From the IMG/VR virus record IMGVR_UViG_3300012931_000759, positions 1 to 64,000 of that record: 64,000 bases of DNA. The stretch is one strand, 5' to 3'. Shown here piece by piece: positions 11,399 to 63,241 of the stretch (position 1 is its first letter; each line of letters begins with the position of its first letter). Both the position numbers and the translations under genes were made by a program. A model generated the notes under the pieces. That model was not told where the DNA came from and ran no database searches. It saw nothing but the letters and a program-made list of their open reading frames with translations.

Positions 11399-11446
11399 GT
11401 CCCCCTTTACCTTAATAATGAATTATTGATAGGAACGGAGCAAAAA

Positions 11447-27146: not shown

Positions 27147-27206
27147 AGCAATTCTACCAGCTCATCGTACACTCTGTACAGATTGCTTAAACCGGAGCAG
27201 GATATA

Positions 27207-28556
27207 ATGTATTCCCTGAAAACAGACCTCTACCAGATAGCCATGATGGCCGGGTACTTTCATGGCGGAATGGCCGATAAGGTTGTGACCTGCGAGGCCT
27301 TCGCCCGCAAGCTGCCATCAAAACGCCGGTTCCTGGTCATGGCCGGCACCGAGGAGATCCGCGAGACGCTCGTCGGTCTGTGCTTCATGGGCACGGACAT
27401 CGAGTTTCTGCGGAGCATTCCGGCGCTGCGCAAGGTCATGACGCCAGCTTTCGAAGAGTGGCTGCTCAATTTCCGATTCACCGGTGACATGTGGGCCATG
27501 GCCGAGGGCGAGATCGTCTTCCCAGGCGAGCCGCTGGTTAGGATCACGGCGCCGGTCGCGCAGGCCCAACTTGCCGAGACCATGGTCCTGTCAGTCCTCA
27601 ATCACGACATGAGAGTTGCCTCGAAGGCGGCCAGGATCGTCCTGGCTGCGCGCGGCAAGCCGCTCATGGAGTTCGGCACGCGCCGGACGCACCACGAGGC
27701 TGCTCTCTACTCTGCGAGAGCTGCCTATCTGGCTGGATTCTCGGGGACATCCAACGTGGAGGCTGGCCTGCGATTCGGAATCCCGGTCATGGGCACCGTA
27801 GCTCACATGTGGACCATGGTCCATCAATCAGAGGCGGACGCTTTCAAGAAGTGGTCGGAACTGTGGGACAATCCGACTTTTCTGATCGACACCTACGACA
27901 CACTGCGCGGAGCTAGGCTGGTGGCTGGGATCAGGAACGCCTCCATGGTGAGGATCGATTCCGGGGACCTCTTGTCTCAATCGAAACTCGTAAGGTACAT
28001 TCTCGATGAAGGCGGATGTAAGGCAGGCATCGTTGTCTCCGGGGACCTAGACGAATACGCGGTCCATGAGCTTGTCTCATCAGACGCGCCAATCGACAGC
28101 TTCGGGATCGGCACTAAACTGGTCGCTCCGGACGACGCGCCATCTCTTGGGATCGTGTACAAGGCTGTCTACGACGAGACGGAGGCCAGGCCGCTCATGA
28201 AAACCTCGGGCGGCAAAGCAACCATGCCTGGCAGGAAACAGGTTTTCCTCGACCAACGCGAGGGCGGCTGGACCCATCTAGTCGCCTTGGACGGGGAGCT
28301 GGAGTCATCCGAGCTGCTCAGCCCACTGCTCGACAGGCATATCGCTGGCGGATTCATCGTGGACGGAGTGCGCGATGTGACCCTAGAGGTGTCGAGACGG
28401 TACTGTAACGCGGCGCTCGGATCGCTTTCGGCCCTTCCGGTCGGATACGACCTTTCGTCTATACTAGAGCCGAGCGTCGGCGTCCCGGTCAAGGCACACG
28501 ACAGCCTTACCAAAATGTTCGTGTCGGCGCGTTGCGCCATGGAGTCCGACGAATGA
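27207..28556 (+). CDS. pncB: Nicotinate phosphoribosyltransferase
   Basis: TDLYQIAM, EFGTRR, GTSNV, GTVAH, LIDTYD, VRIDSGD, FGIGT, GIVYK. Confidence 0.92.
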   Translation: MYSLKTDLYQIAMMAGYFHGGMADKVVTCEAFARKLPSKRRFLVMAGTEEIRETLVGLCFMGTDIEFLRSIPALRKVMTPAFEEWLLNFRFTGDMWAMAEGEIVFPGEPLVRITAPVAQAQLAETMVLSVLNHDMRVASKAARIVLAARGKPLMEFGTRRTHHEAALYSARAAYLAGFSGTSNVEAGLRFGIPVMGTVAHMWTMVHQSEADAFKKWSELWDNPTFLIDTYDTLRGARLVAGIRNASMVRIDSGDLLSQSKLVRYILDEGGCKAGIVVSGDLDEYAVHELVSSDAPIDSFGIGTKLVAPDDAPSLGIVYKAVYDETEARPLMKTSGGKATMPGRKQVFLDQREGGWTHLVALDGELESSELLSPLLDRHIAGGFIVDGVRDVTLEVSRRYCNAALGSLSALPVGYDLSSILEPSVGVPVKAHDSLTKMFVSARCAMESDE

Positions 28557-35643: not shown

Positions 35644-37122
35644 ATGGGCGCATCGATGAAGGTCAAAGCCTGGACGGACGGGGAAAAAGGCCAACCATCT
35701 TTCCCATCTAATTTCTCTGTCACTAAACGTTGGGAGGGTAGCTGTACCAGCTTGGCAAAAAATAGCAATAAATTCTTCCACATAGAGGTACAGGTTGCCC
35801 TAAACGGGCAAGCTCGCATTTACACGGTGTATGGTCGTGTAGGAAACAGCGGCGCACGAGAGTTTCGGTATTACTCTTCGGAGGCTGCTTGTTTGTCGGA
35901 CTATGAAGCACTGATCCACAAAAAACGCGATCGGAAAAAGGAGCCTTATACGGAGATCGACCTGGCCATCACGTCCGTTGGCTCCGAGGGTGCAAAGGCA
36001 ATCACCAAGCCGATGACTGGCATCTCGGCCTCGTCCGCTCCGGAGCAGAAAAGCACGCTCCATGCCGAGATACAACGGTTGGTGCGCCGATGGTTCGGGG
36101 ATACAGGACACTTCGTCGAAATGAACCTCAAATGCCCACTGGGCCAGCTGAGTGTCGAGCAAATCGACAAGGGGCGCGCCGTCCTGGATGAGTGTCGCAA
36201 CCGGATCAACACAAAAAGGAAAACCGATGAGGCCGAGTGGGATATGCTGACGTCCCAATTCTACAGCCTTGTACCTCATGTTCTCCCACGAAAAATCGAC
36301 GCTAGTGCCCTGCGGCTCGATGCCATAGACCGTATTATGGCAAGATCGGATATTCTTGACACTTTCCTTGACGCCAAGAATGTAGCCTCGGTTCTGGCTA
36401 AAGGCACGTCGGCGGATGCGCAGTATGCCAAACTACAGGCAAAGATGGAGTGGATGGATCCGCAGGATCCTGTTCGCCAATGGATAGAAAAACTTGTCCA
36501 CGAAACAAGGGCAAAGAACCACGCAGGTCTAGGCAGGCTCAAGGTGTTCAATGTATTCAGACTTTTGCGCAATGGGGAACTGGATCATTTTTCCGCCTCG
36601 CTCGAACGGATAGGCAGAGAAGTCAAAGGCAAAGGCCAGAAGCCAAGGTTTACCACCTTAGAACGCCCTGATTTGAGCAAAGACGAGCAGCAGGCTTTCG
36701 TGAATGCTAATGTCTGGCCCTTGTGGCACGGGACGCAGCCACAGAACATGGTCGGCATCATCTCGGCTGGACTGAAGATCAGACCTTCCGGATCGGTTTA
36801 CTCTGGCAGTATGTTTGGTGATGGAGCTTACTTTGCCGAGTCTTTTAGTAAGAGCGCAAACTATTCTGGTTGTAGGGGATCTTACTGGAGTAGAGATAGC
36901 GGGGAAGACAGAGCATTCGTGTTCTTGAACGATGTAATCATAGGCAATCCGCATATCGTATACACCTCCCAGTTTTTCCATGAGCCACCGTTCGGCACGC
37001 ATAGTGTGTATGCTCTGCCAGGACGGGGACTTTACAACTCGGAGAACATCACCTACAAACAATCTGGAGCTGGACAGCAGAACAGACTGCGCTATATCGT
37101 GGAGTTTCAATCGAACCAGTAG
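35644..37122 (+). CDS. PARP-like ADP-ribosyltransferase (WGR + helical regulatory + catalytic domains)
   Basis: NSNKFF...YGRVG (WGR), LTSQFYSLVPH, LWHGT, GSMFGDGAYFA, KSANY, NSE (H-Y-E triad). Confidence 0.9.
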   Translation: MGASMKVKAWTDGEKGQPSFPSNFSVTKRWEGSCTSLAKNSNKFFHIEVQVALNGQARIYTVYGRVGNSGAREFRYYSSEAACLSDYEALIHKKRDRKKEPYTEIDLAITSVGSEGAKAITKPMTGISASSAPEQKSTLHAEIQRLVRRWFGDTGHFVEMNLKCPLGQLSVEQIDKGRAVLDECRNRINTKRKTDEAEWDMLTSQFYSLVPHVLPRKIDASALRLDAIDRIMARSDILDTFLDAKNVASVLAKGTSADAQYAKLQAKMEWMDPQDPVRQWIEKLVHETRAKNHAGLGRLKVFNVFRLLRNGELDHFSASLERIGREVKGKGQKPRFTTLERPDLSKDEQQAFVNANVWPLWHGTQPQNMVGIISAGLKIRPSGSVYSGSMFGDGAYFAESFSKSANYSGCRGSYWSRDSGEDRAFVFLNDVIIGNPHIVYTSQFFHEPPFGTHSVYALPGRGLYNSENITYKQSGAGQQNRLRYIVEFQSNQ

Positions 37123-52149: not shown

Positions 52150-53049
52150 ATGATCAAGGATGGTCTCAAACTTATTGATATGCTGGTCGGTGCCATGCGT
52201 CAGCAGGCTTCTGAGGCAAGGACATCGAAGGCCGAGGTTGATATATCCGGAGGTGTGGATAGCGCAGTTGTCGCGGCCTTGGCATGTCGTGCATTCGGTA
52301 AAGACAATGTCATCGGTGTGTACAGTTCGATTAATTCTTCAGCAGAGTCTTGTCAATTGGCTGGGCTGGTGGCCGATAAGTTCGGTTTCAAACTCCTGAA
52401 ACTCGACCTGTCTGACGCGTATCGCCAAATAGTCATGGCCATTGCCACCGAGTTTGGACGTCTTGGTATCCCGTTTCCGGACCAGAATGACCCTCGACAA
52501 CGCACGGCGTTCGGGGGGTTGAGAAGCTGTCTGCGCGCCCCAGTGGGGCGCTTTGTGAACAGGGCGTTTGGTGGTATCCGCGAGGGTACTGGCAATAGGG
52601 ACGAGGATGAGTTGATCAGATTTTTCCAGAAGGGCGGCGATGGCGAGGTGGACAGTAACTGGATCGAGGGTCTGTTCAAGGGCGAGGTGTGGGAGTTGGC
52701 CGCATATCTTGGAGTTCCGCAGGAGATTATCGACGTAGCCCCGACGCCCGACCTGTGGGGAGGAACTGTACATACTGATGAGGGCGAATTGAAGGAGCTT
52801 ACTGGTGTGTCCCTGACCTACACCCGTCCAGGCGGACCAATGGGTACAATAGAGTGGGCCAGTAGAGAGAACGCGAGGAACGGCTGTGTCACGCGGAGCG
52901 GCTCGAATCCTGGCTGTATGGGATACAACGAGGCCCAGTCGACCATTATCCTGGCGATGCGAAAGTTGGAGCGATCCAGTAGGCACAAGACTTGTATGCC
53001 ACCATGTCTTCCGCGCGAGCGACTTCTCAAGGCGGGCGTGGTCGAATAG
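52150..53049 (+). CDS. nadE: NH3-dependent NAD+ synthetase
   Basis: ISGGVDSAV, GTGNRDE, GDG, KGEVWELA, PTPDLW, TDE. Confidence 0.88.
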   Translation: MIKDGLKLIDMLVGAMRQQASEARTSKAEVDISGGVDSAVVAALACRAFGKDNVIGVYSSINSSAESCQLAGLVADKFGFKLLKLDLSDAYRQIVMAIATEFGRLGIPFPDQNDPRQRTAFGGLRSCLRAPVGRFVNRAFGGIREGTGNRDEDELIRFFQKGGDGEVDSNWIEGLFKGEVWELAAYLGVPQEIIDVAPTPDLWGGTVHTDEGELKELTGVSLTYTRPGGPMGTIEWASRENARNGCVTRSGSNPGCMGYNEAQSTIILAMRKLERSSRHKTCMPPCLPRERLLKAGVVE

Positions 53050-53080: not shown

Positions 53081-53582
53081 ACAATCAGGAGGACATGAAC
53101 ATGACGAGTTTTCTCATTGGTCTGGGGATCGGCCTCACCGGGGGACCGGTGCTGGTGTATTTTGTGAAATTGGGCTATAAGAAGCTCAAGGAGAAGTTTG
53201 GTTCGGTCGAGTAGGCCGATAATGGCGGGCGACGGTTTTGCGACCCCCACCCACCACTGCGGTGGTGATCATGCCGTGCTATTAGATCAAATGGTGCGAA
53301 GCGTATGAGATGAAAACTAGGGTCGTAATGCCTTCGCTTGATCTTTTTGAGGAATGGAAAGGCGACGAGGCAGTCATATATACGGAGATCGGTTTTACCA
53401 AGGTGAAAACGGAGCTGGTGGACAAATAGGGTTTCTGTTGCTTGCCCACCGATCTTGAGCGCCTCGAGGACAAAAGCGACAAAAAAGACACAAACGATTC
53501 CGATAAGTTGTGAAATAGTTGGCTTTGGGAAGTCGACATCCGGAGAAAAAGCGTATATAGTAAGACACGACGAAAGAAATGT

Positions 53583-53699
53583 GGGGATGTTGCCAAACAG
53601 GAAAAGGCACCTGCTTCAGCATTCGGTTCTCGGGACCAAAACATCCGAAGCACACGCTGGGGCGCAAGCCCATTGTTGGTTCGATTCCAACCATCTCCA
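53583..53699 (+). ncRNA. tRNA-like RNA with the conserved module replacing the anticodon arm (family copy B1)
   Basis: GGGGATG/CATCTCC acceptor, D arm, TTCGATT T loop; module tgcttc..TCG-gttc/ggac-CAAA..gaagCACACGC. Confidence 0.75.
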
Positions 53700-53701
53700 C
53701 T

Positions 53702-53824
53702 GAAGACGCGCAAAGGAACGGAACTCACACGCGAAGATCAAATGGTTGATCATCTGTATTTGGAACAGAATGTTGCGGGTTCGAATCCCGTCGCACAAAT
53801 TAGTTCCCTCGCTCGCGCGTTTTC
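53702..53824 (+). ncRNA. Y-RNA-like RNA: terminal stem enclosing a tRNA-like body (family copy A1)
   Basis: GAAGACGCG/CGCGTTTTC ends, CAAA, GGAACT/AGTTCC, CACACGC; internal D, anticodon-like and T arms. Confidence 0.75.
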
Positions 53825-53831
53825 ATTTTTT

Positions 53832-53961
53832 GGGGAGTAGAGGCACCTGGGGTGCCAACTAGCCGTAAACTAGTACAACCTGTTACGTTACTCGGACGAC
53901 GAGAGTCGACCCAATCTACGGAAACGCACAAGCATTTGCCGTTCGAATCGGTAACTCCCCA
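53832..53961 (+). ncRNA. tRNA-Tyr(GTA)-like RNA with the module in the variable region (family copy B2)
   Basis: GGGGAGT/ACTCCCC; ACTAG ccGTAaa CTAGT; TCG..CAAT..CACAAGC; TTCGAAT. Confidence 0.75.
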
Positions 53962-54173
53962 CTGAAGACGCGCAAAGGATCAGCTGTCGATAATTGCTGT
54001 GAATTCTAATAGGAAACTGGAGCCGCATCTTGTCGGCTCCAATGACGTGCCAGGCAGAACGGGCTATTGTGGGGATAACGTGTCGTGTTAACCTGAAATT
54101 GTCCTTATGCCCCCCACCGGACGAGGCGGGGTCAATTATGCTAATACATCGCGATGGAAGGAAGGGTTGCTTA

Positions 54174-54470
54174 ATGAGTTTTTCGAGCTACCTAAACGAC
54201 TCATACATGGAATGGGCCAAAGCCCTGGCGTCGTCACCGTCGCCCGACACGGAGGAGGTGCAGACTGACGATGTTTGCGGCCAGCTGAGGGGCCTGCTCG
54301 TGAATGGCGAGCTGACAGACAAGGGGAGTTCCGAGGCAGAGGACGTCATCTGGAAGTTTGTTCTGAAGCAGAAGCCACGGCTAAGCATGCGAGCGTTCGG
54401 GCAACTTCGCAAGTCTTTGCCACCGGTTTTTCATCCTGCTATCGAGCGGGTGTTCCTGCGCTGTCTCTAG
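54174..54470 (+). CDS. Hypothetical protein
   Basis: ORF following a 35-bp repeat. Confidence 0.45.
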   Translation: MSFSSYLNDSYMEWAKALASSPSPDTEEVQTDDVCGQLRGLLVNGELTDKGSSEAEDVIWKFVLKQKPRLSMRAFGQLRKSLPPVFHPAIERVFLRCL

Positions 54471-54485
54471 GAATTTCTCTGCATC

Positions 54486-54758
54486 ATGCTAACTACATCG
54501 CGCTGGAAGGAAGGGTTGCTTGCGGCATCTGGCCGACACGCAGGGGAGAGCGAAACTGAAGCGGAGCGCTTCCAGTACCTGGCAATGCGAGTGGAACAGA
54601 GCGCTGGTTACCCAAATCGAATGCGGGACCTGGTCTTGAATTACTTGTGCCACATCAGTGCAACCGATCGGCCAGCGGTCCTCGATCGGCTCGCGAAGGA
54701 GGTCCCCCAGCCGTCGGTACTAGCCGTCGTGGAAGAAATTCGTCAACGCATTGCCTGA
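54486..54758 (+). CDS. Hypothetical protein
   Basis: 90-aa ORF. Confidence 0.45.
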   Translation: MLTTSRWKEGLLAASGRHAGESETEAERFQYLAMRVEQSAGYPNRMRDLVLNYLCHISATDRPAVLDRLAKEVPQPSVLAVVEEIRQRIA

Positions 54759-54784
54759 TTCTTTAGCATCTGGAATATTTCGAT

Positions 54785-54981
54785 GTCGGCGATGATACAC
54801 TTAACACGCAAACCAGGATCCCAAACGGCGCGCGAAAGCGGGCATTGGGACACCTGCGTGTTGAAGTCGGCCTTCGCCGTCGTCCTGCCCGAGCGCCCGT
54901 ATACCTTCGCGGGCAATAGCACCCTCGGTCAGGACTCCATCGGAGGCACAGGCGCATAGGATCGAGGGACTGTATACCGAC
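54785..54981. ncRNA. Candidate multi-helix structured RNA
   Basis: GTCGG/CCGAC closing stem; TTAACACGCA/TGCGTGTTGA; CGC-GAAA-GCG; TGCCCG/CGGGCA; CCCTCGGTC/GATCGAGGG. Confidence 0.5.
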
Positions 54982-55037
54982 CTTCCAACGCGCCTGGGCC
55001 CACAAGCCCGGGCGTTTTGGGTTTATGGGGAGAAAGA

Positions 55038-55625
55038 GTGCTAGATAAGACGCAAAGACCTGATAAACCAGAGAAACTCCATTGTAGGGAATGTAAACAG
55101 GAATTCCCATTTACTCCGGAGTTTTTCTATCGGGATCGAAAGCGCAAATATGGTCTCGATACCGTATGTAAGTTCTGTAGCAGACTTGGCACCAGGCGAC
55201 GCTATGCTGAAAACCCAGAATTGTGGCATCAAAGCAATCGTAAATATCGCCAAACCCATCTAGAAGAGACGAACAATAAAAAGAGAAAATGGGCAAAGAG
55301 GAATCCTGATAAGGAGCGGAACGCAAGGCTGAAATACACATACGGAATTACGCTGGACGAATTCAATCACATTTTGATGCTCCAAGAAAACTGTTGTGCT
55401 ATCTGCGGTTATTCTTTTGGGGGCAAGAAACCTAGCGTAGACCACGACCACACGACAGGTGTGGTTAGAGGGCTGTTGTGCGACAGGTGTAATTTCGGTA
55501 TAGGATGTTTCGAGGATGACGCCGCGCGACTTGAGAAAGCAGCCATTTACCTCAATAAGTGGAAGGAAAGCATCAAGAAGGTCGTAGGCGTCGAATCTCC
55601 CAACGAGATTGGTCTGGACATTTGA
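55038..55625 (+). CDS. Endonuclease VII-domain homing endonuclease
   Basis: YGITLDEF...CAICG...VDHDHTTGVVRGLLCDRCNFGIG. Confidence 0.9.
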   Translation: MLDKTQRPDKPEKLHCRECKQEFPFTPEFFYRDRKRKYGLDTVCKFCSRLGTRRRYAENPELWHQSNRKYRQTHLEETNNKKRKWAKRNPDKERNARLKYTYGITLDEFNHILMLQENCCAICGYSFGGKKPSVDHDHTTGVVRGLLCDRCNFGIGCFEDDAARLEKAAIYLNKWKESIKKVVGVESPNEIGLDI

Positions 55626-55849
55626 AAGGAAAAGATGATGAAATCCAAGAGAGAGAACACTGTCCCGAGTTGTGTGAGTTTGTGGAGAATGTCAAAGATA
55701 TGGTGAATGCTGACAAGCAGCAGGATGAGGAGATTCCAAAGTTTAAGGTGCCTCTTTCTAGTTGGCTGGGACTCGGCGCTGTGATTTTAGGAATCGTGGG
55801 TTTCGTCGTTGTAATGTTCCGCATCTGGATATAGGTTTCGTGAATAGTT

Positions 55850-55936
55850 GGGGTCGTTGACGATAAGGTCATCGAGCTGGGCCGTAACCCCAGCGCTGTA
55901 ATAGCCAATCCGATTCGAGTTCGGACGACCCCACCA
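55850..55936 (+). tRNA. tRNA-Tyr(GTA)
   Basis: GGGGTCG/CGACCCC, ccGTAac loop, long variable arm, encoded CCA. Confidence 0.8.
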
Positions 55937-56023
55937 AGGAGTAGCAGATGGATATACAATACTTTGTATTTCTTGACAGGTTGAAACGGATGCGCCGCGA
56001 CGGCGATTCCAATTGTGACGCGC

Positions 56024-56139
56024 GCATCCTTAGTGAAATGGAATCACAGCAGGCTTTTGTTGATGAAAGGAAATTAGTTGGTTCGATTCCAACCATCAGC
56101 GCAACCTGCACATTGGGGGTTCGAGTCCCTCAGGATGCA
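56024..56139 (+). tRNA. tRNA with an acceptor/T-arm minihelix nested in its anticodon loop
   Basis: Outer GCATCCT/AGGATGC and GCAGG/CCTGC; inner GTTGATG/CATCAGC plus GTTGG-TTCGATT-CCAAC. Confidence 0.7.
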
Positions 56140-56142
56140 AAT

Positions 56143-56214
56143 GAGGCTGAAGCTTTGACGGCGAAGCCGTAGGCTCTTAACCTATAGAACCGAGTTCGAC
56201 TCTCGGCAGCCTCA
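56143..56214 (+). tRNA. tRNA-Lys(CTT)
   Basis: GAGGCTG/CAGCCTC; GTAGG ctCTTaa CCTAT; TTCGACT. Confidence 0.85.
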
Positions 56215-56215
56215 C

Positions 56216-56286
56216 TTCGGAGTCGTCCAATAGGAAGGACGGCGGTCTTTGACACCGCATATCCCAGTCCGAGTCTGGCTCTGGAT
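56216..56286 (+). tRNA. tRNA-Gln(TTG)
   Basis: GCGGT ctTTGac ACCGC; atypical T loop TCCGAGT and short T stem. Confidence 0.7.
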
Positions 56287-56294
56287 TTAATATT

Positions 56295-56367
56295 GATCTC
56301 GTCGTCTAGGGGCAGTGGATAGGACACTCTCACTGTCCAGACGCCAGTTCAATTCTGGTCGAGGTCA
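56295..56367 (+). tRNA. tRNA-Glu(CTC)
   Basis: GATCTCG/CGAGGTC; GGACA ctCTCac TGTCC; TTCAATT. Confidence 0.75.
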
Positions 56368-56377
56368 CGAAAACTCC

Positions 56378-56531
56378 GATGCCCTTGGTATCGGCACCGT
56401 CGAATGCGCATTCCACGGTGGAGATGAGGCGATCGCCATCTTTTGGGATGGCGTGAGGTTTCAACATTGACAACTGAATAGTGGTAATTGACTGCGGTGA
56501 GCTGAGAATGTAGGCTCTCCGCCGGGGCATC
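56378..56531. ncRNA. Candidate structured RNA inside the tRNA cluster
   Basis: GATGCCC/GGGCATC closing stem; CGCCATC/GATGGCG; GCGGtGAGC/GCTCtCCGC. Confidence 0.45.
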
Positions 56532-56565
56532 GACGGCGCGAGCGTGCTGGGCGGTGTCCCATCGA

Positions 56566-56637
56566 GGGATCATAGCTCAATGGGCAGAGCGCGAGACCGA
56601 AAATTTCGTTACCCCCGTCCGAATCGGGGTGATCCCA
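56566..56637 (+). tRNA. tRNA-Phe(GAA)
   Basis: GGGATCA/TGATCCC; CGAGA ccGAAaa TTTCG; T loop TCCGAAT. Confidence 0.75.
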
Positions 56638-56643
56638 CAATAG

Positions 56644-56685
56644 ATCGCGCGCGTTGATGTAGCGGAAAAGTTTCGCGTCGCTTTT
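56644..56685 (+). promoter_or_regulatory. Conserved intergenic motif copy 4
   Basis: ATCGCGCGCGTTGATGTAGCGG...TTTCGCGTCGCTTTT. Confidence 0.65.
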
Positions 56686-56703
56686 GAATGAAAGGACGGC
56701 AGC

Positions 56704-57000
56704 ATGGGCAAGAGCATCGACCTGCGCGCCCAGTTCGGGCGCAAGTTCACCGAGGATGAGGAGGCTTTCGAGATGGCCCAGTGCGAGGAATGGATGGCCG
56801 ACGAGATGCGCTCCTACTGGAGAAGGATACAGCGCTCCTCGTGGCCGACTGAGGATCCAGGCGGGCGTTGCGCGAATTGCGGGCTTGAGGCGCGTTTTGC
56901 CAAAGCCTGTGTTGTTGGGGCCGCCTGCTACGATGGCGAGTGGTGTTGCTCTACCGAATGCGACGCGCAACTGACACGGGAAGGATGCCCGCTGGAATAA
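56704..57000 (+). CDS. Hypothetical Cys-rich protein
   Basis: AAGGA RBS; CANC...CCSTEC. Confidence 0.55.
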   Translation: MGKSIDLRAQFGRKFTEDEEAFEMAQCEEWMADEMRSYWRRIQRSSWPTEDPGGRCANCGLEARFAKACVVGAACYDGEWCCSTECDAQLTREGCPLE

Positions 57001-57206
57001 TAGACTAGGAAAGGGAAAGCGATGAAGCTGAGGAAGCTACGCAGGATACTGAGGCAGGCGGCGTTTAACGCCGATGGTCTCAACCCTCAGGTTGAGGTCT
57101 GTCTGGGCGACAAAATATTGCGCATCAAGCACATTGGGCAGTTTGGGGTTGTACCGGATGTCGTTATCGAACTTGAGGATCCCGAGAAAGAAACGGGTTG
57201 TTAATC

Positions 57207-57527
57207 ATGCCGCGCAAGAAGAAAGAGGCTCCTTCGGAGCCGAAGCCGACCAGGGTCGAAATCGAGACTTTTAGGGAACCTGATTCCTACTGGCTGGGCC
57301 AGCTCAGGAAAGACAATCCGTCCTGTTTCAACGGTGACATCCAGGTACACAGATATCGCGTGACGGTTGAACTGATCGAGGAGTCGCCAGAAGTGATCGG
57401 TGCGAGAATCCAGGAACTCTGGAACAATTGTGACAACTGGCATCATCACGATCCACTTAGATTCGCAGCCAAGAAAATTGGATGGGAGTTGAAAGGCGAC
57501 TTTGGGAACAAGAAGAAGGAGGCTTGA
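57207..57527 (+). CDS. Hypothetical phage protein
   Basis: PSCFNG...YRVTVELIEE. Confidence 0.6.
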   Translation: MPRKKKEAPSEPKPTRVEIETFREPDSYWLGQLRKDNPSCFNGDIQVHRYRVTVELIEESPEVIGARIQELWNNCDNWHHHDPLRFAAKKIGWELKGDFGNKKKEA

Positions 57528-57599
57528 CAATTGCTTTCGACATTATATAAATCGTCGGAAGCTGGAATTCAACTTTTGGGACACATTAAAGGAACAAAT

Positions 57600-57818
57600 A
57601 TGGCTGCCACAATCACGGTTCTCAAAAATAAGTTGAGTAAAGTGCGCAAACAGATAGAACTATTGAATTCACAAGAATCAGAATTATACAAACAGTTGGC
57701 CCTATTATGTGGGCGCACAGGTCACCAGTGGGAAGAGGAGTGGGCTGCGGTGGGTATTCATAAATACTCTCGAAAAATAGGATGTTTCCGTTGCGCGATT
57801 TGCGGTACACTGTCCTAG
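57600..57818 (+). CDS. Small coiled-coil/zinc-ribbon protein
   Basis: AAGGA RBS; C...GH.W...CAICG. Confidence 0.5.
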   Translation: MAATITVLKNKLSKVRKQIELLNSQESELYKQLALLCGRTGHQWEEEWAAVGIHKYSRKIGCFRCAICGTLS

Positions 57819-57830
57819 TGGAAAGGAGGC

Positions 57831-57858
57831 TTGACAATCGCCTCTAGGATGATAAATT
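57831..57858 (+). promoter_or_regulatory. Sigma70-like promoter upstream of the second ncRNA cluster
   Basis: TTGACA...TAAATT; AAGGAGGCTTGACAAT is also present at about 57516. Confidence 0.5.
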
Positions 57859-57871
57859 GATTGTTGTAAAT

Positions 57872-57978
57872 GGGGAGGTCGCCCAATTGGTAGGGCAACA
57901 GACCTGCTTCGCCTCTCGGTTTTTTGGAACCATTTGATGAAGCCTACAAGCATGCTCGTTCGAATCGAGCCCTCCCCA
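57872..57978 (+). ncRNA. tRNA-like RNA with the module replacing the anticodon arm (family copy B3)
   Basis: GGGGAGG/CCTCCCC; gcttc..TCG-gttt/gaac-CATT..gaagc-cTACAAGC; TTCGAAT. Confidence 0.75.
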
Positions 57979-57982
57979 CAAT

Positions 57983-58115
57983 GGGTCAGTAGCCGAATGG
58001 TATAGGCAAAAGCATTTTGGAGCTTTCAAACAGCAACAAGCTTTACCGCTCGGCTCCTCACGGAGCCATAAGGTAAAGCTCACAAGCATTGGAGGTTCGA
58101 TTCCTCCCTGGCCCA
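57983..58115 (+). ncRNA. tRNA-like RNA with the module in the variable region (family copy B4)
   Basis: GGGTCAG/CTGGCCC; GCTTTACC-gcTCG-GCTCC/GGAGC-CATAa-GGTAAAGC-tCACAAGC; TTCGATT. Confidence 0.75.
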
Positions 58116-58117
58116 AC

Positions 58118-58248
58118 AGGACGCGCAAAGGGGAAAAGTCTACAAGCGAATTAGCTCAGTCGGTTTGAGCGTCTGACTATGGATCAGAAGGTCAAGGGTT
58201 CAAATCCCTTATCCGCGACAAAATCCGACTTGCTCACTCGCGCGTCCT
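58118..58248 (+). ncRNA. Y-RNA-like RNA: terminal stem enclosing an Arg-like tRNA body with ATG anticodon (family copy A3)
   Basis: AGGACGCG/CGCGTCCT, CAAA, AAGTC/GACTT, TACAAGC, cacTCG; TCTGA ctATGga TCAGA. Confidence 0.75.
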
Positions 58249-58875
58249 AATTTTCTGTTCTACGATGCCGACAATGATATCTAGAAACCGTTGCCCTTTG
58301 GTTGGTTTGAAGTTTTTCATTGTCGACACGTCGATGATACAGAGAGCAATGCCCCTCTCGGCGCAGGCAGCGAATTTCCGATGGTCATTGGTTTGGATGG
58401 AGGCAAGTTTCTCCGTCCCGTGGATCGGCTCGTAATGGTAGATCCCGTTGAGTTCGAACGCTAAATTGAGGCTTGGAAAATGGATGTCGAGTTCGGAGTT
58501 GATCGCCTCTTTGGCGTTGAACATAATCTCCAGGTCGGGATAGAGTTTCCGCAGTTGCTCCTCCAGCCAGACCTCAAGTTTAGAGCGGCGGGTGCCATGG
58601 GTTTTGTGGAGATTGTTGTAGGTGGCGGCACATGATTTGGAACAGAAAAGATTGTTGCTTTTGCTGTGTTTCCTATTTTGAAGCAGGGTGCTTTTTCTGC
58701 GACCGAAAAGTGTACCGCATTGTTGGCAAGGGATCAATTTGGGAAGTCGTTTTCCACTCTGGTTGAATGCTTGGGCACACTTGTTGGAACAGAATTTGTA
58801 CTTGCGCGAGTCACGAATGAACCACGACCTGCGTCGTTTGAAGGTGGTACCACAGTTATCGCATTGAAGTTCCAT
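58234..58875 (-). CDS. PD-(D/E)xK endonuclease with N-terminal zinc fingers, inserted in the RNA array
   Basis: CxxC...FCSxxC repeats; SKLE...ELDI...LAFELNGIYHY. Confidence 0.75.
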   Translation of the reverse strand: MELQCDNCGTTFKRRRSWFIRDSRKYKFCSNKCAQAFNQSGKRLPKLIPCQQCGTLFGRRKSTLLQNRKHSKSNNLFCSKSCAATYNNLHKTHGTRRSKLEVWLEEQLRKLYPDLEIMFNAKEAINSELDIHFPSLNLAFELNGIYHYEPIHGTEKLASIQTNDHRKFAACAERGIALCIIDVSTMKNFKPTKGQRFLDIIVGIVEQKIRTRE

Positions 58876-58987
58876 AGATTTTCCTTGTTTTAATGCGAAA
58901 CAATTGATAGATTTCGACCCAAAATATCCACACGGCTCCACCCGCATTGCGCGGACAGAGCAATGAAGCCAATACAGGCTTCATCAC

Positions 58988-59125
58988 GCCCCCGTCGACC
59001 AATTGGAAGGTCAACAGTTTATTCAGACTGTCAAATCAGCACATCTGCTTCCGCACTCGGTTCTTTGAACCAATTGTTGAAGCCCACACGCGAAATTAGT
59101 CCAGGTTCGAATCCTGGCGGGGGCA
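58988..59125 (+). ncRNA. tRNA-like RNA with the module in the variable region (family copy B5)
   Basis: GCCCCCG/CGGGGGC; gcttc-cgcacTCG-GTTC/GAAC-CAAT..gaagc-cCACACGC; TTCGAAT. Confidence 0.75.
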
Positions 59126-59223
59126 CGCCGGGGACGACTGAAAACACCAGCCTTGTCCGGAAGGGGACAAGGGGTCATCCCCAATTTATTCCAAACAGCG
59201 GGAAAGACAGCAAGGAACCAGCG

Positions 59224-59538
59224 ATGATCGATTTTGACAATGCCTCGGCGAATCTGGTCGAGTACTTGAGGAGATGCGGTTCCCGCAACGAGGCCAACAT
59301 CTCCATGGACAGGGAAGATCACTACAAACCGATGTACAGGGCGGTGGCTCTGCTGGTTGCCCCAACGCATCCGTTCATCGACGAAATGCTCGGCGGCGAG
59401 AGACCCACAAGAGAACAGGCACTCGCTATTCTTTGGCATGCGCATCCGTATTTCGCGCATGTGCTGGATACGGAACCGGAGTTGTTTGAACAGATGTGGG
59501 AACACCACACCAGTGCGTGGGATTGGGACAAGAAGTAG
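59224..59538 (+). CDS. Hypothetical protein
   Basis: AAGGA RBS. Confidence 0.55.
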   Translation: MIDFDNASANLVEYLRRCGSRNEANISMDREDHYKPMYRAVALLVAPTHPFIDEMLGGERPTREQALAILWHAHPYFAHVLDTEPELFEQMWEHHTSAWDWDKK

Positions 59539-59585: not shown

Positions 59586-61481
59586 ATGGTAGCCAGACAG
59601 AATGAAATTGACAGGCAGCGTGTCGAGGCTCTCGGTCCAGCCGAACGAATTATTCAGTCCCTTACAACCTATGTTGACCACGCTGTACATAATCGTCCAG
59701 GTTGTATAGTAGCAGATGGTCGAACCAAGGTTGGCGTGAGGTGGGATCCAGTGACCTGGAAGGAAGAGAACGGTCACAAGGTAGTCTACCGCCTCGATAA
59801 GGTGGGAACCAAGCAGAATAAGGTCAAGATCGGCGTCCTGGATGGCACCAAGGTTATGGATGGCGTTAGGCAGGTAGGCGAGTACCGTAAGCCGGGGATC
59901 TTCCCGGAGGTTGCGATTTGGCTATATCGGCAGATTGCTGAAGTGTACAAGCTGGATAATGAATTCGCAGCTCGTTGGGCATCTTGGGCTTTCACCAAGG
60001 AGCATCGTGATCTGAAGGTCGTGCTTGCGGCTTTCTTGCTTGTACAGAACCGCTGCGGCGAGCCGGTTGTCGAGGATGGTAAGGTTCTATTCCACGACGA
60101 GGACTTCAGGGATGTGGGCGAGGCAATGTGCCTTATTCGCGCCAAGAACGACCTCAACCCGAAACTCCTGCTCAGGATTGGCGACATTTTGAGTTTGCCG
60201 GGAGTTGCGGCGATCAACAGAGAACTCGGGTTTGGCAAGTCGGCTAGAACTCCAGCGAAGGGAAGGTACTACAAGGCGGTCGAGAAGTGGCTCCAGTACC
60301 GCGAAGATAACCCGAAGATGCTTGAAGGTCTCGTGGCAGCCGGTTTTCGCACCTCTGTGATGGAGCTTGCGCGCCGGGTCGGCTACAAGCCATCCACTCC
60401 AAAGTTTTTCGAGGTTTTGCGGTGGAAGCAGGTACAGGCTAAGGACGGCAGGCGTGAGTTGGCTATCGGAACCGAAGTCAAGAAGGCTGAGACTTGGAAG
60501 GGTCTTTCGGAGAAGAAAATCTGCGAGCGCATTGTAGCGACGAAGCCAAATTACAAGCGCATTGTTGGTTTACTTCCTTCGGAGGTTGGTCTAACCAGAG
60601 CTGTTATGATGGCAGCTATCGAGGCCGGATCGGTGTCGGACGCCGACCTGATCATTCTCACGCCGACGCTTGAGGAGTTAGGTCTCCTGACGGTGAAGGA
60701 AGTCTCCGAGCGTTGGAAGAAGGCGACCTCGGTGGCCGAGAATCAAAGGGCGGCGAACATCGCCAGGCGAGTGAAATCACAGGCGACCAAGGAGGCTCTC
60801 GCAGATGCGGCCGACAGCGTGGCGAAGAAGGCCATGGAAGAGGTCACAAAGGATCTGAGGATCTACGCGATTGTCGACAGGTCTGGCTCTATGCAGAGTG
60901 CGATCGACCGGGCCAAGGAGTACCTTGCCAAGCTGCTTGTGGGGTTTCCATTCGATAGGTTACATGTCAGCGTGTTCAATACTGTGGGTAGCGAGGTAGT
61001 GATTAAGCACCCGTCGGCCAAGGGCGTCGAGGCGGCCTTCAGGGGCTATTTTGCGGGTGGTGGCACGAGCTATGCCGAGGGTGTTAAGGCACTAGCTAAG
61101 CGCCGTCCGAAGGATGGTGAGGACGCCATCATGATCTTCGTCGGCGACCAGCTCGACTACGGTACACCGCAGCTGGTGGCGGCTGTCCAGGCCTCGGGTC
61201 TTAGGCCGGTGGCTTTCGGACTCCTAGAAGTCATAAGCCAGCAGTACGGGCGCGGCTCGATCGTCAGGGATGCCGCGCGGCAGCTGAATATTCCGTGCTT
61301 TGACATCGAAGAGTCAATCTTCGCTGACCCGTACGCCGTGACCAGGGTGCTCCGCAATCTGATCGCGAACACGCCGGTCGTGGCCGAGGCCCGCAGGGCC
61401 GTTGCCAGACAGACGCTGGTCGAAGAGATCCTCAAAACTCCGCTTTTACAGCTGCCTTTGTTTGCGCGATGCGGCAAATAA
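59586..61481 (+). CDS. VWA (MIDAS) domain protein with large N-terminal helical region; candidate divergent Ro60/TROVE
   Basis: IVDRSGSM, GGGTSY, FVGD; AAGGAG RBS; 631 aa. The VWA call is well supported; the Ro60 call is inference. Confidence 0.75.
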   Translation: MVARQNEIDRQRVEALGPAERIIQSLTTYVDHAVHNRPGCIVADGRTKVGVRWDPVTWKEENGHKVVYRLDKVGTKQNKVKIGVLDGTKVMDGVRQVGEYRKPGIFPEVAIWLYRQIAEVYKLDNEFAARWASWAFTKEHRDLKVVLAAFLLVQNRCGEPVVEDGKVLFHDEDFRDVGEAMCLIRAKNDLNPKLLLRIGDILSLPGVAAINRELGFGKSARTPAKGRYYKAVEKWLQYREDNPKMLEGLVAAGFRTSVMELARRVGYKPSTPKFFEVLRWKQVQAKDGRRELAIGTEVKKAETWKGLSEKKICERIVATKPNYKRIVGLLPSEVGLTRAVMMAAIEAGSVSDADLIILTPTLEELGLLTVKEVSERWKKATSVAENQRAANIARRVKSQATKEALADAADSVAKKAMEEVTKDLRIYAIVDRSGSMQSAIDRAKEYLAKLLVGFPFDRLHVSVFNTVGSEVVIKHPSAKGVEAAFRGYFAGGGTSYAEGVKALAKRRPKDGEDAIMIFVGDQLDYGTPQLVAAVQASGLRPVAFGLLEVISQQYGRGSIVRDAARQLNIPCFDIEESIFADPYAVTRVLRNLIANTPVVAEARRAVARQTLVEEILKTPLLQLPLFARCGK

Positions 61482-62175: not shown

Positions 62176-62247
62176 CGCGCGATAGCTCAATTGGTAGAGC
62201 AAGCCCTTGACCGGGCGGGATCCGGGTTTCGAGGCTCGGTCGCGCAC
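62176..62247 (+). tRNA. Degenerate tRNA (anticodon ambiguous)
   Basis: GCGCGA/TCGCGC stem and canonical TAGCTCAATTGGTAGAGC D arm; 6-nt anticodon loop, 8-nt T loop. Confidence 0.5.
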
Positions 62248-62260
62248 TAGGAGAAAGACA

Positions 62261-63241
62261 ATGGGTTGGCAGGACCTGCTCGCATCGGACGACGACAAGA
62301 AGACGCTTCCGTGGACGGGCGGCAGGCAGATCCACGATAGGGAGCGCACCTGGACGATCGAGGGGAGGCTCCCGGACGAGCACGGCTGGTACTCGTTCCG
62401 CGTGTCTGGCGGTCGCAAGGCCGAGCTGGAGGGTCCTATGGACCCCGATTCCGATTTCGAGAACGGCCACAAGCTCGCCAAGGGGTACCTGGTGGGAGAC
62501 CGGCTGATCCAGGACGACGCGAGGGTCGATCCCGACCCGGTCAGGCTGGTCGACCAGACGACGCCCGTGTTTCTGGTGGAGCCGGGTCTAGATCGGTTCG
62601 TGAGGGCGGTGGTAGCTAGGACAAGAGGCGGTCTAGTGTATATCAGACAGGAGTTCCCGCAGGGTTCCGAGGCGGCCGTTCAGATGGCCTACCAGGACCG
62701 CAAGGACTCGGTGGTACACGTGGCCGGGGTCACCCCGGCGCTCGACTTGGCGTTCCGCTGGCTCTCCGGCCAGAGGCTGGCGGCCGAGGAGCGCGAACGC
62801 GAGATGGCGCGTATCAGGGCCGAGGAGGAGCGCAAGTGGGCGGAAGCTGAGCGATTTAAGCAGGCGATGAAGGATTCTGGAACCGGAGCAGGCAGAAGGG
62901 CGCTGGCACAGCGCGATTTCAACACAGCTGCCAAGGCGGCTTTGAAACTCACTGGAGCGGAATTACTGGATGCTAGACCGTCATACAACCGACGTGAAAT
63001 GGTAGTTCAGTATCGGTTTCAGAACAGGCGACTTGAGTGTGTGGTTGATAAAGACACACTACGCGTGGTTGACTCTGGTATCTGTTTGACCGACCACCAC
63101 ACTGGCGTGAAAGGTGATATGCGTTTTACGCTTGAATCGCTTCCCACCGTTGTTGGTCAGGCGATACGGGAAAACAAACTTGTGGTGTACCGGCATGTTG
63201 ACGGAGATCGGGATTATGCCGACGACAATTGGGACGATTGA
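62261..63241 (+). CDS. Hypothetical protein
   Basis: AGGAG RBS; 326-aa ORF. Confidence 0.65.
   Translation: MGWQDLLASDDDKKTLPWTGGRQIHDRERTWTIEGRLPDEHGWYSFRVSGGRKAELEGPMDPDSDFENGHKLAKGYLVGDRLIQDDARVDPDPVRLVDQTTPVFLVEPGLDRFVRAVVARTRGGLVYIRQEFPQGSEAAVQMAYQDRKDSVVHVAGVTPALDLAFRWLSGQRLAAEEREREMARIRAEEERKWAEAERFKQAMKDSGTGAGRRALAQRDFNTAAKAALKLTGAELLDARPSYNRREMVVQYRFQNRRLECVVDKDTLRVVDSGICLTDHHTGVKGDMRFTLESLPTVVGQAIRENKLVVYRHVDGDRDYADDNWDD

What the first reader, a model, noticed from the sequence alone, without database searches (positions are those of the whole stretch)
53583..59125. The shared RNA module occurs in circularly permuted topologies on three positions of the tRNA scaffold
Seen: in class A (53702, 58118) stem B forms the RNA 5'/3' ends and the tRNA body hangs from stem A through a weakened acceptor stem. 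In class B the acceptor stem forms the ends and stem B is capped by a 3-4 nt loop. Within class B the module either replaces the anticodon arm (53583, 57872) or sits in the variable region after a retained anticodon-like hairpin (53832, 57983, 58988). Strand order is exactly permuted: class A reads stemB-CAAA-stemA-YACAMGC...stemA'-TCG-stemB', while class B reads stemA'-TCG-stemB'-loop-stemB-CAWW-stemA-YACAMGC. Known: YrlA RNAs attach through the anticodon stem with a closed acceptor stem. Inference: class B RNAs keep a free 7-bp acceptor end and could be RNase P-processed, CCA-tailed and perhaps aminoacylated while protein-bound.
Basis: partly seen in the sequence, partly recalled or inferred. 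Interest (0 to 1): 0.85.

Follow-up and report, generated by a model that had tools for sequence, protein, structure and literature searches.

The report
Handle-tagged tRNA-like RNAs of huge phages
A 340-kb phage encodes seven tRNA-derived RNAs that all carry one conserved two-helix "handle", attached at different places on the tRNA. The same handle recurs in dozens of related huge phages, sometimes in truly circularly permuted tRNA genes, so this is a widespread RNA family that the literature searches here did not find described.

Summary
Seven + strand elements (53583-59125) are tRNA-like RNAs that share a ~45-52 nt module: stem A, an internal loop (CUC-G / C-A), stem B, then an invariant YACAMGC.

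In five elements the module is closed by a loop and sits inside a tRNA with a perfect 7-bp acceptor stem. Three of these keep an anticodon-like hairpin and two have lost it. In the other two elements the module is open, its halves flank a tRNA body, and the acceptor stem is weakened.

A covariance model built from other phages finds about 90 copies with strong compensatory change. A descriptor for the open form gives 39 hits on the + strand, 0 on the - strand and 0 in shuffled sequence.

Relatives add a fourth form absent from this window. It is a true circular permutation (T arm, acceptor 3' strand, often NCCA, spacer, acceptor 5' strand, D arm, anticodon arm). A third of the closed forms encode CCA.

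The RNAs lie within 10 kb of a conserved cassette in 29 of 44 loci. The cassette is a vWA protein, a ~330-aa partner, a JAB peptidase, a small Ubl-like protein and a ThiF/E1-like enzyme, and it sits among large canonical tRNA arrays. The vWA protein's resemblance to Ro60 is weak.

Best reading: Y-RNA-like tRNA mimics in which the module is a protein-binding handle. Function is unproven.

The parts
53533..53561 (+). Sigma-70-like promoter candidate (TCGACA-17-TATAGT), 21 nt upstream of E1
   Evidence: The number of such sites in the region is not above shuffles; only the position is suggestive.
53583..53699 (+). E1: closed-module tRNA-like RNA without an anticodon arm. Module 53613-53657, extra GCAA hairpin before the T arm, 7/7 acceptor stem.
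   Evidence: (Rfam tRNA 36.7 bits with insert)
53701..53825 (+). E2: open-module form (A1). 5' half-module 53701-53732, tRNA-like body (anticodon loop AUUUGGA), 3' half-module 53802-53825, then a U run. Acceptor helix only 4 bp.
   Evidence: (Rfam tRNA 53731-53794, model positions 5-66)
53832..53961 (+). E3: closed-module tRNA-like RNA with the module (53882-53933) in the variable region. 6-bp D stem with a tiny loop. Anticodon-like loop CCGUAAA (GUA, but C33).
   Evidence: (orthologue L047:3509 with compensatory changes)
53962..53979 (+). Orphan copy of the first 18 nt of E2's 5' half-module (stem B 5' strand + AAAGGA), with no matching 3' half downstream
   Evidence: read directly from the sequence
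57831..57858 (+). Sigma-70-like promoter candidate (TTGACA-16-TAAATT, TG-extended), 13 nt upstream of E4
57872..57978 (+). E4: closed-module tRNA-like RNA without an anticodon arm; module 57906-57951
   Evidence: Rfam tRNA 41.2 bits; model R1 28.6 bits
57983..58115 (+). E5: closed-module tRNA-like RNA. Module 58040-58087 in the variable region. 8-nt anticodon-like loop AUUUUGGA; the orthologue L047:3234 has a 7-nt UUG loop.
   Evidence: Rfam tRNA 42.7 bits; z = -5.9
58118..58248 (+). E6: open-module form (A1). 5' half 58118-58147, tRNA body 58145-58219 (anticodon AUG), 3' half 58227-58248. Acceptor stem 5 of 7 pairs.
   Evidence: (61.6 bits)
58988..59125 (+). E7: closed-module tRNA-like RNA. 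Module 59047-59091 in the variable region. Non-canonical anticodon hairpin.
   Evidence: 26.4 bits; z = -4.5
59586..61481 (+). 631-aa protein: N-terminal beta domain, a ~300-aa helical region, and a C-terminal vWA domain with an invariant MIDAS motif. Head of the conserved cassette and candidate (unproven) partner of the module.
62207..63241 (+). ~330-aa protein of unknown fold (likely start 62261). Follows the vWA gene in 40 of 44 loci.

Best explanation
The seven elements belong to a large family of tRNA-derived non-coding RNAs of huge phages. Each is built from two units: a tRNA body and an autonomous two-helix module.

Shown:
- The module folds as stem A, internal loop, stem B. Its invariant nucleotides sit in the unpaired parts: CC before stem A', CUC-G / C-A between the stems, and YACAMGC after stem A.
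- It can be joined to the tRNA body in the variable region, in the variable region after loss of the anticodon arm, or across the acceptor end. In relatives it can also be opened, with the acceptor end closed instead.

Inferred:
- The clusters E1-E2-E3 and E4-E5-E6 are transcribed from promoters just upstream.
- Closed forms are cut out by the tRNA-processing enzymes and receive CCA.
- The cut after their discriminator base creates the 5' end of the open form, which starts 1-2 nt downstream and ends at stem B plus a U run.
- The module serves as a protein-binding handle, and the tRNA body engages tRNA-binding enzymes or is itself protected or presented. This would make the RNAs work like bacterial YrlA-type Y RNAs bound to Ro60.
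- The most likely partner is the syntenic cassette headed by the vWA protein, but this last step is the weakest.
For: - Module structure: 92% of cells paired against 28-48% when slid, all 11 pairs covary, 281 double-sided changes on 90 copies.
- Sequence invariants lie in unpaired positions.
- The open-form descriptor gives 39 / 0 / 0 hits for + strand / - strand / shuffled.
- tRNA-type ends: 7/7 acceptor stems in nearly all closed forms. NCCA is encoded in 21 of 64, against 1.8% background, and in 6 of 14 permuted forms inside the acceptor-closing spacer.
- Signs of mimicry rather than decoding:
  - 5 closed forms lack the anticodon arm.
  - Only 20 of the 33 strict 5-bp/7-nt arms have T33.
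  - Anticodon loops differ between orthologues in the window and L047.
  - The same phages carry 20-40 canonical tRNAs nearby.
  - A1 acceptor stems are weakened or truncated.
- Synteny:
  - Module RNAs lie within 10 kb of the vWA gene in 29 of 44 non-redundant loci and almost always on its strand.
  - Typically they come directly after the cassette vWA-partner-JAB-Ubl-ThiF.
  - 15 of 23 module-positive contigs from an independent pattern scan are known to carry the gene.
- Ro60-like hints for the vWA protein: the five best full-length Foldseek hits are Ro60/TROVE structures with 529-563 aligned columns. Language-model features of residues 1-422 alone point to TROVE/DUF2828 clusters. The MIDAS motif is invariant.
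- Precedent: YrlA RNAs are tRNA-like, are encoded beside Ro60 in bacteria and phages, and M. smegmatis YrlA is cut by RNase P and CCA-tailed (PMC4201824).
Against: - No experiment or transcript data; RNA ends and protein binding are inferred.
- The N-terminal 422 residues modelled alone give no TROVE match (best E = 0.15).
- Pfam, PDB-sequence and exhaustive HMM searches find only the vWA domain.
- The full-length Ro60 hits have TM-scores of 0.28-0.41 and rmsd of 10.7-11.8 A. The Atlas score of 0.77 is 'a lead only'.
- The cassette sits inside tRNA arrays in general. A sister-family locus and phage Rctr197k have the gene pair and tRNA arrays but no detectable module within ~10 kb. Synteny may therefore reflect lineage-wide genome order.
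- The JAB/Ubl/E1 genes suggest a different biochemistry (sulfur transfer or Ubl conjugation) that may be unrelated to RNA binding.
- The bacterial Y RNA motif GNCGAAN0-1G is not conserved in the module.
- Many relatives look like competent tRNAs: canonical loops, CCA, diverse anticodons.
Confidence: 0.5

Rival explanations
1. They are working, chargeable tRNAs with an oversized variable arm. On this reading they form a special class of phage tRNAs, for example versions that escape host anticodon nucleases. The module would stabilise them or mark them as phage-made. The permuted genes would give two-piece tRNAs held together by the module.
For: - 7-bp acceptor stems and encoded CCA in 21 of 64 closed and 6 of 14 permuted forms.
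- Anticodon-like triplets cover more than 15 amino acids and include TTA suppressor-like loops.
- The tRNAs inside A1 elements are called as ordinary tRNAs by ARAGORN. They often read A/U-rich codons (taa, tat) or carry A34 in His/Asp/Asn/Tyr.
Against: - About 40% of strict anticodon arms lack T33. 26 of 64 have non-5/7 geometry and 5 have no arm.
- In the window itself E3 has C33, E5 and E7 have 8-nt loops, and E1 and E4 have none.
- Orthologous elements change 'anticodon' between close relatives.
- The same phages already carry canonical tRNAs for the same anticodons.
- A1 acceptor stems are weak or cut down to 3-4 bp.
Confidence: 0.22
2. The module is a processing signal, a bacterial-virus counterpart of the archaeal bulge-helix-bulge motif. 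It would be cut out of the variable region, used as a leader-trailer processing stem in A1, and used to circularise permuted precursors in A2. Phage RNA ligase would reseal the product, giving ordinary tRNAs.
For: - The module occurs in the same three gene contexts as BHB motifs in archaea and algae: internal insert, leader-trailer, permuted gene (PMC3978253).
- The phage encodes an Rnl1-type RNA ligase and an RlaP nucleotidyltransferase.
Against: - The geometry is not BHB-like.
- Excision at the base of stem A would leave an unpaired variable region of 13-19 nt.
- Members without an anticodon arm could never become tRNAs.
- Conservation of internal-loop nucleotides and of both stems across more than 100 copies goes beyond what a cut site needs.
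- The ligase genes are 40-50 kb away in the window and are not found in the related loci.
Confidence: 0.1
3. The elements are decaying tRNA genes hit by a small mobile insertion, or the shared pattern is a chance resemblance.
For: Homing-endonuclease genes are interspersed: HNH at 58234-58947 on the - strand and Endo VII at 55017-55625. An orphan half-module lies at 53962-53979 and a tRNA with a T-arm insert lies at 56024-56139.
Against: - Compensatory changes maintain both stems across phages whose vWA proteins are only 51-63% identical in most related loci.
- Strict strand bias and zero hits in shuffles.
- Acceptor stems remain perfect.
- No terminal repeats or target duplications were seen.
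Confidence: 0.03

Closest known systems
YrlA-type bacterial and phage Y RNAs bound by Ro60/Rsr (Chen et al. 2014, PMC4201824; Thermus phage phiLo Ro60 with Yrl1/Yrl2, PMC12135203)
   Same: - Both are tRNA-derived non-coding RNAs with T and D arms plus a protein-binding stem.
- Several copies are clustered near a ring-protein-like vWA gene in phage genomes.
- The A2 relatives have the YrlA order: stem 5' strand, T arm, closed acceptor, D arm, stem 3' strand.
- M. smegmatis YrlA, like the forms here, has a 7-bp acceptor and receives CCA.
   Different: - No match to Rfam YrlA or Y_RNA, and no conserved GNCGAAN0-1G motif.
- The stem joins at the variable region or the acceptor end, not at the anticodon stem.
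- Most members keep an anticodon arm, and most have an open acceptor end.
- The neighbouring protein is not recognisable as TROVE by sequence.
Circularly permuted tRNA genes (Cyanidioschyzon merolae, prasinophyte algae, Thermofilum; PMC3978253)
   Same: A2 relatives encode the 3' half (T arm, acceptor 3' strand, often CCA), a spacer, then the 5' half. The gene ends pair with each other.
   Different: - Those genes use a BHB motif, splicing endonuclease and ligase, and break at intron positions.
- Here the break lies in a conserved variable-region module with no BHB.
- The host is a bacterial virus.
- No permuted copy lies in this window.
Two-piece tmRNA from circularly permuted ssrA genes of alphaproteobacteria and cyanobacteria (my own knowledge, not checked here)
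   Same: A bacterial tRNA-like RNA whose permuted gene gives a molecule held together by base pairing after processing at the acceptor end.
   Different: tmRNA carries a tag reading frame and pseudoknots. It has no shared module and comes as a single gene.
Class II tRNAs and tRNA-Sec (long variable arm, extended D stem; my own knowledge)
   Same: The extra arm emerges from the variable region. Many relatives have a 5-6 bp D stem with a 3-4 nt loop, as in tRNA-Sec.
   Different: Natural variable arms are at most about 20 nt and are specific to certain amino acids. Here a 45-65 nt arm of one conserved design sits on bodies of many anticodon types.

Membership tests
YrlA / bacterial Y RNA | Match to the curated covariance models (Rfam YrlA, Y_RNA) | tested here: not met
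   cmscan of the region at E <= 10 returns only tRNA and chance hits
YrlA / bacterial Y RNA | Conserved GNCGAAN0-1G motif in the Ro60-binding strand (PMC4201824) | tested here: not met
   Only E1 (UCCGAAG) and a few copies resemble it. The strand is variable across about 90 copies, and the invariant positions are CUCG and YACAMGC.
YrlA / bacterial Y RNA | tRNA-like domain with T and D arms | tested here: met
   Rfam tRNA hits to E1, E2, E4, E5 and E6. All seven have a GGTTCGAnTCC-type T arm and a D arm.
YrlA / bacterial Y RNA | Encoded next to a Ro60 (TROVE + vWA) gene | tested here: inconclusive
   A vWA gene lies 460 nt after E7, and within 10 kb in 29 of 44 loci. TROVE is supported only by full-length Foldseek hits and Atlas features. 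It is not supported by Pfam, PDB sequence search or the N-terminal model.
YrlA / bacterial Y RNA | Bound by Ro60 in vivo | not testable with these tools
   Needs immunoprecipitation or EMSA
Canonical elongator tRNA | 7-bp acceptor stem, 5-bp T stem, discriminator base and CCA end | tested here: met
   Met for the closed forms: 7/7 acceptor stems. CCA is not encoded in the window but is encoded in 21 of 64 relatives. Not met for E2 and E6 (4 bp and 5 of 7).
Canonical elongator tRNA | 5-bp anticodon stem with a 7-nt loop, U33 and purine 37 | tested here: not met
   Window: E1 and E4 have none, E3 has C33, E5 and E7 have 8-nt loops. E2 and E6 have canonical loops. Family: 33 of 64 have strict geometry and 20 of those have T33.
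Canonical elongator tRNA | Variable region of 4-5 nt, or a class II arm of about 20 nt or less | tested here: not met
   The variable region is 55-80 nt in the closed forms
Circularly permuted tRNA gene | 3' half encoded upstream of the 5' half, with acceptor strands joined by a removable spacer | tested here: not met
   Not met in the window: E2 and E6 have normal 5'-to-3' tRNA order. Met in 14 elements of related phages.
Circularly permuted tRNA gene | BHB motif at the paired termini | tested here: not met
   The termini form stem B and stem A with a UC/AWW loop. There are no 3-nt bulges separated by 4 bp.
Ro60 / TROVE protein (for ORF 59586-61481) | TROVE HEAT-repeat ring detectable by profile or by fold | tested here: inconclusive
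   Pfam and PDB sequence searches give none. Full-length fold search puts Ro60 first, at E = 7e-8 to 8e-6 but TM 0.28-0.41. The N-terminal region alone gives none. Atlas features score 0.77 for TROVE.
Ro60 / TROVE protein (for ORF 59586-61481) | C-terminal vWA domain with a MIDAS motif | tested here: met
   VWA_2 at residues 428-521. D431, S433, S435, T494 and D521 are invariant in 28 sequences.

The most novel reading that the evidence does not exclude
Huge phages may build a whole class of tRNAs as modular, re-wirable molecules. One protein-binding arm is inserted in the variable region. The gene can then be left continuous, stripped of its anticodon arm, clamped at the acceptor end, or circularly permuted so that RNase P and CCA addition yield two-piece, possibly chargeable tRNAs held together by the arm. 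This would be the first report of permuted tRNA genes in a virus of bacteria. It would also supply a living series of intermediates showing how YrlA-type Y RNAs arose from tRNAs, and the arm would recruit a divergent Ro60-like/Ubl cassette to tRNAs during infection.
Probability: 0.25. Interest if true: 0.92.

Novelty: new variant of a known kind. Interest (0 to 1): 0.78.

Why it matters
- tRNA mimicry by Y RNAs is known from a few bacteria, but its origin and purpose remain open. This family offers more than 100 natural variants in which one module is wired to tRNA bodies in four topologies, including AC-arm-less and permuted forms that bridge ordinary tRNAs and YrlA.
- It gives a concrete RNA motif (CUCG / YACAMGC) and a short list of candidate partners to test.
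- It flags RNA genes that standard tRNA finders miss or mis-call in huge-phage genomes.
- If the RNAs are decoys, shields or repair platforms for tRNAs, they bear on the arms race between phages and tRNA-cleaving host defences.
- If they are chargeable, they widen the known limits of tRNA architecture.

Tried and rejected
- **Rfam.** Gathering and E <= 10 thresholds gave only tRNA hits. No YrlA, Y_RNA, ribozyme or r-protein leader matched.
- **GenBank phages.** The region has no close DNA relative. One protein homologue exists, in Virus Rctr197k, annotated only as a hypothetical; no module lies within 9 kb of it.
- **TROVE by sequence.** All of the following were negative beyond the vWA domain:
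  - Pfam on the protein, on 28 homologues and on distant relatives.
  - PDB sequence search with phmmer and with a profile.
  - An exhaustive HMM search of 1.8 billion proteins.
  - A search seeded from the 525-aa sister family.
- **TROVE by fold.** The N-terminal 422 residues alone gave no hit.
- **Partner protein.** Pfam, PHROGs and the ESM Atlas gave nothing for the ~330-aa protein.
- **MAFFT alignment of modules.** It mis-aligned the hairpin. I seeded the model from length-matched copies instead.
- **Motifs considered from memory and rejected.** Neither a kink-turn nor a BHB reading fits: there are no tandem G·A pairs and no paired 3-nt bulges.
- **Genome-collection pattern scan.** Not run, because the allowed pattern complexity would return mostly chance matches.
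- **Literature.** Searches for Ro60/Y RNA in phages, permuted tRNA in phages, and huge-phage tRNA inserts found no description of this family.

Full report
**Source and setting.** The window is the first 64 kb of IMG/VR contig IMGVR_UViG_3300012931_000759, a 340-kb huge-phage contig. It encodes RNA-repair and NAD-related functions typical of such phages: RlaP, an Rnl1-type ligase, Lon, a PARP-like protein, NAPRTase, NAD synthase-like, Cpn60 and a DHH phosphoesterase. ARAGORN calls seven tRNA genes in 55850-58219: six lie in 55850-56640 and the seventh, tRNA-His(atg) at 58145-58219, is the body of E6.

**Check of the observation.** Reading and folding 53300-59400 confirms seven + strand elements at the coordinates given.
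- Five are 'closed-module' RNAs (E1, E3, E4, E5, E7). Each has a perfect 7-bp acceptor stem, a D arm and a GGTTCGAnTCC-type T arm. Between D arm and T arm lies a 45-52 nt insert with the order stem A' strand, UC, stem B hairpin (3-4 nt loop), AWW(W), stem A strand, YACAMGC.
- E3, E5 and E7 keep a hairpin in the anticodon position. E1 and E4 do not.
- Two are 'open-module' RNAs (E2, E6). Stem B (11 and 9 bp) is formed by sequences about 105 nt apart. Its 5' strand is followed by AAA, stem A and YACAMGC, then a tRNA body in normal order, then stem A', UC and the stem B 3' strand, then a U run.
- Rfam's tRNA model hits E1, E2, E4, E5 and E6, with large inserts where the module sits. ARAGORN calls the body of E6 tRNA-His(atg).
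- The acceptor helix is 4 bp in E2 and 5 of 7 in E6.

**Is the module real?** I looked for relatives through the 631-aa protein encoded just downstream (59586-61481). That protein has more than 1,500 homologues at about 60% identity, mostly on contigs of 100-540 kb. 51 loci with 10-kb flanks were fetched.
- A simple regular expression, and then a covariance model (R1) built from six length-matched copies of which five come from other phages, found about 90 modules. Nearly all lie on the strand of the protein gene.
- On that alignment both stems covary strongly. 92% of cells are paired, against 28-48% when partners are slid. All 11 pairs change on both sides, with 281 double-sided cells. The alignment is fitted to the model, but the slide control and the sheer variety of stem sequences make the structure secure.
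- Sequence invariants sit in the unpaired parts: CUCG at the stem A'/stem B junction, an A after stem B, CC before stem A', and ACA-GC after stem A.
- E4 and E7, which were not used for the model, score E = 2e-6 and 7e-6. E1 and E3 are weak with this small model but parse structurally, and E3 has a clear orthologue in the closest relative with compensatory changes.

**What the module sits on.** For 64 closed modules a script recovered a complete tRNA frame around the module: 7/7 acceptor in almost all, then D arm, anticodon arm and T arm.
- The module lies in the variable region, after an A/C-rich linker ending in CC.
- 21 of the 64 encode NCCA immediately after the acceptor stem, against a 1.8% background. 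The closed forms are thus under selection for a tRNA-type 3' end.
- Anticodon-like loops cover more than 15 amino-acid types, including TTA suppressor-like loops.
- However, only 33 of 64 have strict 5-bp/7-nt geometry and only 20 of those have T33. Five lack the arm altogether.
- In the window E3 has C33 and E5 and E7 have 8-nt loops. Orthologues in the closest relative (L047) have different loops.
- The same phages carry 20-40 canonical tRNAs in the same region.
- E1 and E4 align with E7 and L047:2408 with one clean gap that removes exactly the anticodon hairpin and linker. They are therefore deletion derivatives of the variable-region type.

**The open forms.** A descriptor was written for stem B 5' strand, connector, stem A, YACAMG, then 50-170 nt, stem A', TC, stem B 3' strand. 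With stem B of at least 8 bp and stem A of at least 5 bp it gives 39 hits on the + strand, none on the - strand and none in shuffled sequence. The hits fall into two kinds.
- A1 (21 cases, including E2 and E6): the module halves flank a normal-order tRNA. Its acceptor helix is 5-6 of 7 pairs or is truncated to 3-4 bp. The GC of YACAMGC forms the first acceptor pairs.
- A2 (14 cases, none in the window): YACAMGC is followed by the T arm, the acceptor 3' strand, a 4-25 nt spacer, the acceptor 5' strand, the D arm, the anticodon arm and then stem A'. This is the exact circular permutation of the closed form.
- Six of the 14 A2 elements have NCCA right after the acceptor 3' strand, inside the spacer. 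That is what a permuted tRNA gene looks like, and it suggests maturation to a two-piece RNA held together by the module.
- Open forms often start 1-2 nt after the discriminator of a closed form (N-CUGAAG...) and end in a U run.

**Genomic company.** The vWA gene is followed in 40 of 44 loci by a ~330-aa protein of unknown fold. In 36-39 loci three further genes follow:
- a JAB peptidase;
- an 85-aa protein ending in FG followed by S or A;
- a ThiF/E1-like enzyme.

In the window's contig these three lie just beyond the window end. In many phages the module RNAs follow this cassette directly; in the window they precede it. Module RNAs occur within 10 kb in 29 of 44 non-redundant loci. An independent pattern scan of IMG/VR found further module-positive contigs, of which 15 of 23 are known to carry the gene.

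The cassette is, however, embedded in tRNA arrays generally. Phage Rctr197k has the gene pair and arrays but no detectable module nearby. So does a locus of a 525-aa sister family, which has a gene of that sister family, a 332-aa gene of partner size directly after it, and arrays. Synteny is thus suggestive, not decisive.

**Is the protein a Ro60?**
- Architecture fits: a helical region followed by a vWA domain with an invariant MIDAS motif.
- With the full-length AlphaFold model, the five best PDB matches are Ro60/TROVE structures with 529-563 aligned columns, ahead of all vWA-only hits. The TM-scores are only 0.28-0.41.
- The N-terminal 422 residues modelled alone give no significant match.
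- Sequence and profile searches find no TROVE.
- Language-model features of residues 1-422 do put TROVE and DUF2828 clusters first, at a score the tool calls a lead only.

I treat 'Ro60-like' as a hypothesis with roughly even odds.

**Mechanism.**
- Shown: a conserved, covarying two-helix module; tRNA-type frames; four wiring topologies; enrichment of encoded CCA; synteny with the cassette.
- Inferred: transcription from the promoter-like sites at 53533-53561 and 57831-57858; release by tRNA-processing enzymes; a role of the module as a protein-binding handle; a role of the tRNA body as mimic or cargo.

This is how YrlA-type Y RNAs are thought to work with Ro60 (PMC4201824, PMC12135203). The A2 topology is the YrlA topology with an anticodon arm still attached. 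Membership in the YrlA family fails on the model match and on the conserved motif, so I file the elements as a new variant that works like, but is not, YrlA.

Rivals are working tRNAs with a giant variable arm (0.22), a splicing or processing signal (0.10), and decay or chance (0.03).

**Novelty.** No paper in the searched library describes tRNA-like RNAs with this module, permuted tRNA genes in phages, or this cassette. The family is large, structurally well supported and unusual. Its function is open.

Noticed in passing
window 56024-56139: A tRNA (Rfam 50.8 bits) whose anticodon loop holds a 47-nt insert. The insert contains a T-arm minihelix (GTTGGTTCGATTCCAACCATC) nearly identical to E1's T arm and acceptor 3' strand. 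ARAGORN instead calls an overlapping tRNA-Ser(cga) at 56053-56139.
   Followed up: partly
window 53962-53979: An 18-nt orphan copy of the start of E2 (stem B 5' strand + AAAGGA) lies directly after E3, repeating the E1-to-E2 junction. No matching 3' half follows.
   Followed up: partly
L001 14458-15730 (contig 64043-65315, just past the window end); L010 13390-14869: A conserved trio follows the vWA gene and its partner: a JAB peptidase, an 85-aa protein ending ...KTPFG[S/A], and a 217-aa ThiF/E1-like enzyme. This looks like a Ubl or sulfur-carrier system, possibly for tRNA thiolation. It is present in 36-39 of 44 loci.
   Followed up: partly
window 58145-58219 (E6); L038 4488, L023 19535, L030 15466, L024 8534, L034 4724: tRNA bodies associated with the module often carry A34 where G34/queuosine is normal: His ATG, Asp ATC, Asn ATT, Tyr ATA. 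Ile AAT and Val AAC also occur. A34 is very rare in bacterial tRNAs other than Arg-ACG.
   Followed up: no
L013 8280-8412; L047 2408-2543: Closed-module RNAs whose anticodon-like loop reads TTA, complementary to the UAA stop codon. These are suppressor-like.
   Followed up: no
window 52150-53049: A PP-loop ATPase (NAD synthase family, with a weak MnmA-type tRNA thiolase hit) lies 530 nt upstream of E1. It could be a tRNA-modifying enzyme rather than an NAD synthase.
   Followed up: no
window 58234-58947 (-), 55017-55625 (+): Homing-type nuclease genes (an HNH/zinc-finger protein and an endonuclease VII) are interspersed among the RNA genes. A homologue of the vWA protein elsewhere (P0007, 1043 aa) carries an intein.
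   Followed up: no
window 1994-3190, 11099-12598, 27183-28556, 35644-37122: RlaP nucleotidyltransferase, an Rnl1-type RNA ligase, NAPRTase and a PARP-like protein with WGR and regulatory domains. These are RNA-repair and NAD-related genes that may act in counter-defence.
   Followed up: no
L166 (Logan SRR22868766_19795) 10001-12582: A 525-aa sister family of the vWA protein, followed by a 332-aa gene of the partner's size, again lies right after a 29-tRNA array. Band_7, MoxR-type AAA, DUF2201 and ThiF genes lie downstream. No module RNA was detected there.
   Followed up: partly
related loci, e.g. L038 4656-4781, L041 14796-14922, window 53842-53856: Many closed-module RNAs have a D arm with a 5-6 bp stem and a 3-4 nt loop (GTGG/TGG). 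This geometry is otherwise typical of tRNA-Sec.
   Followed up: no
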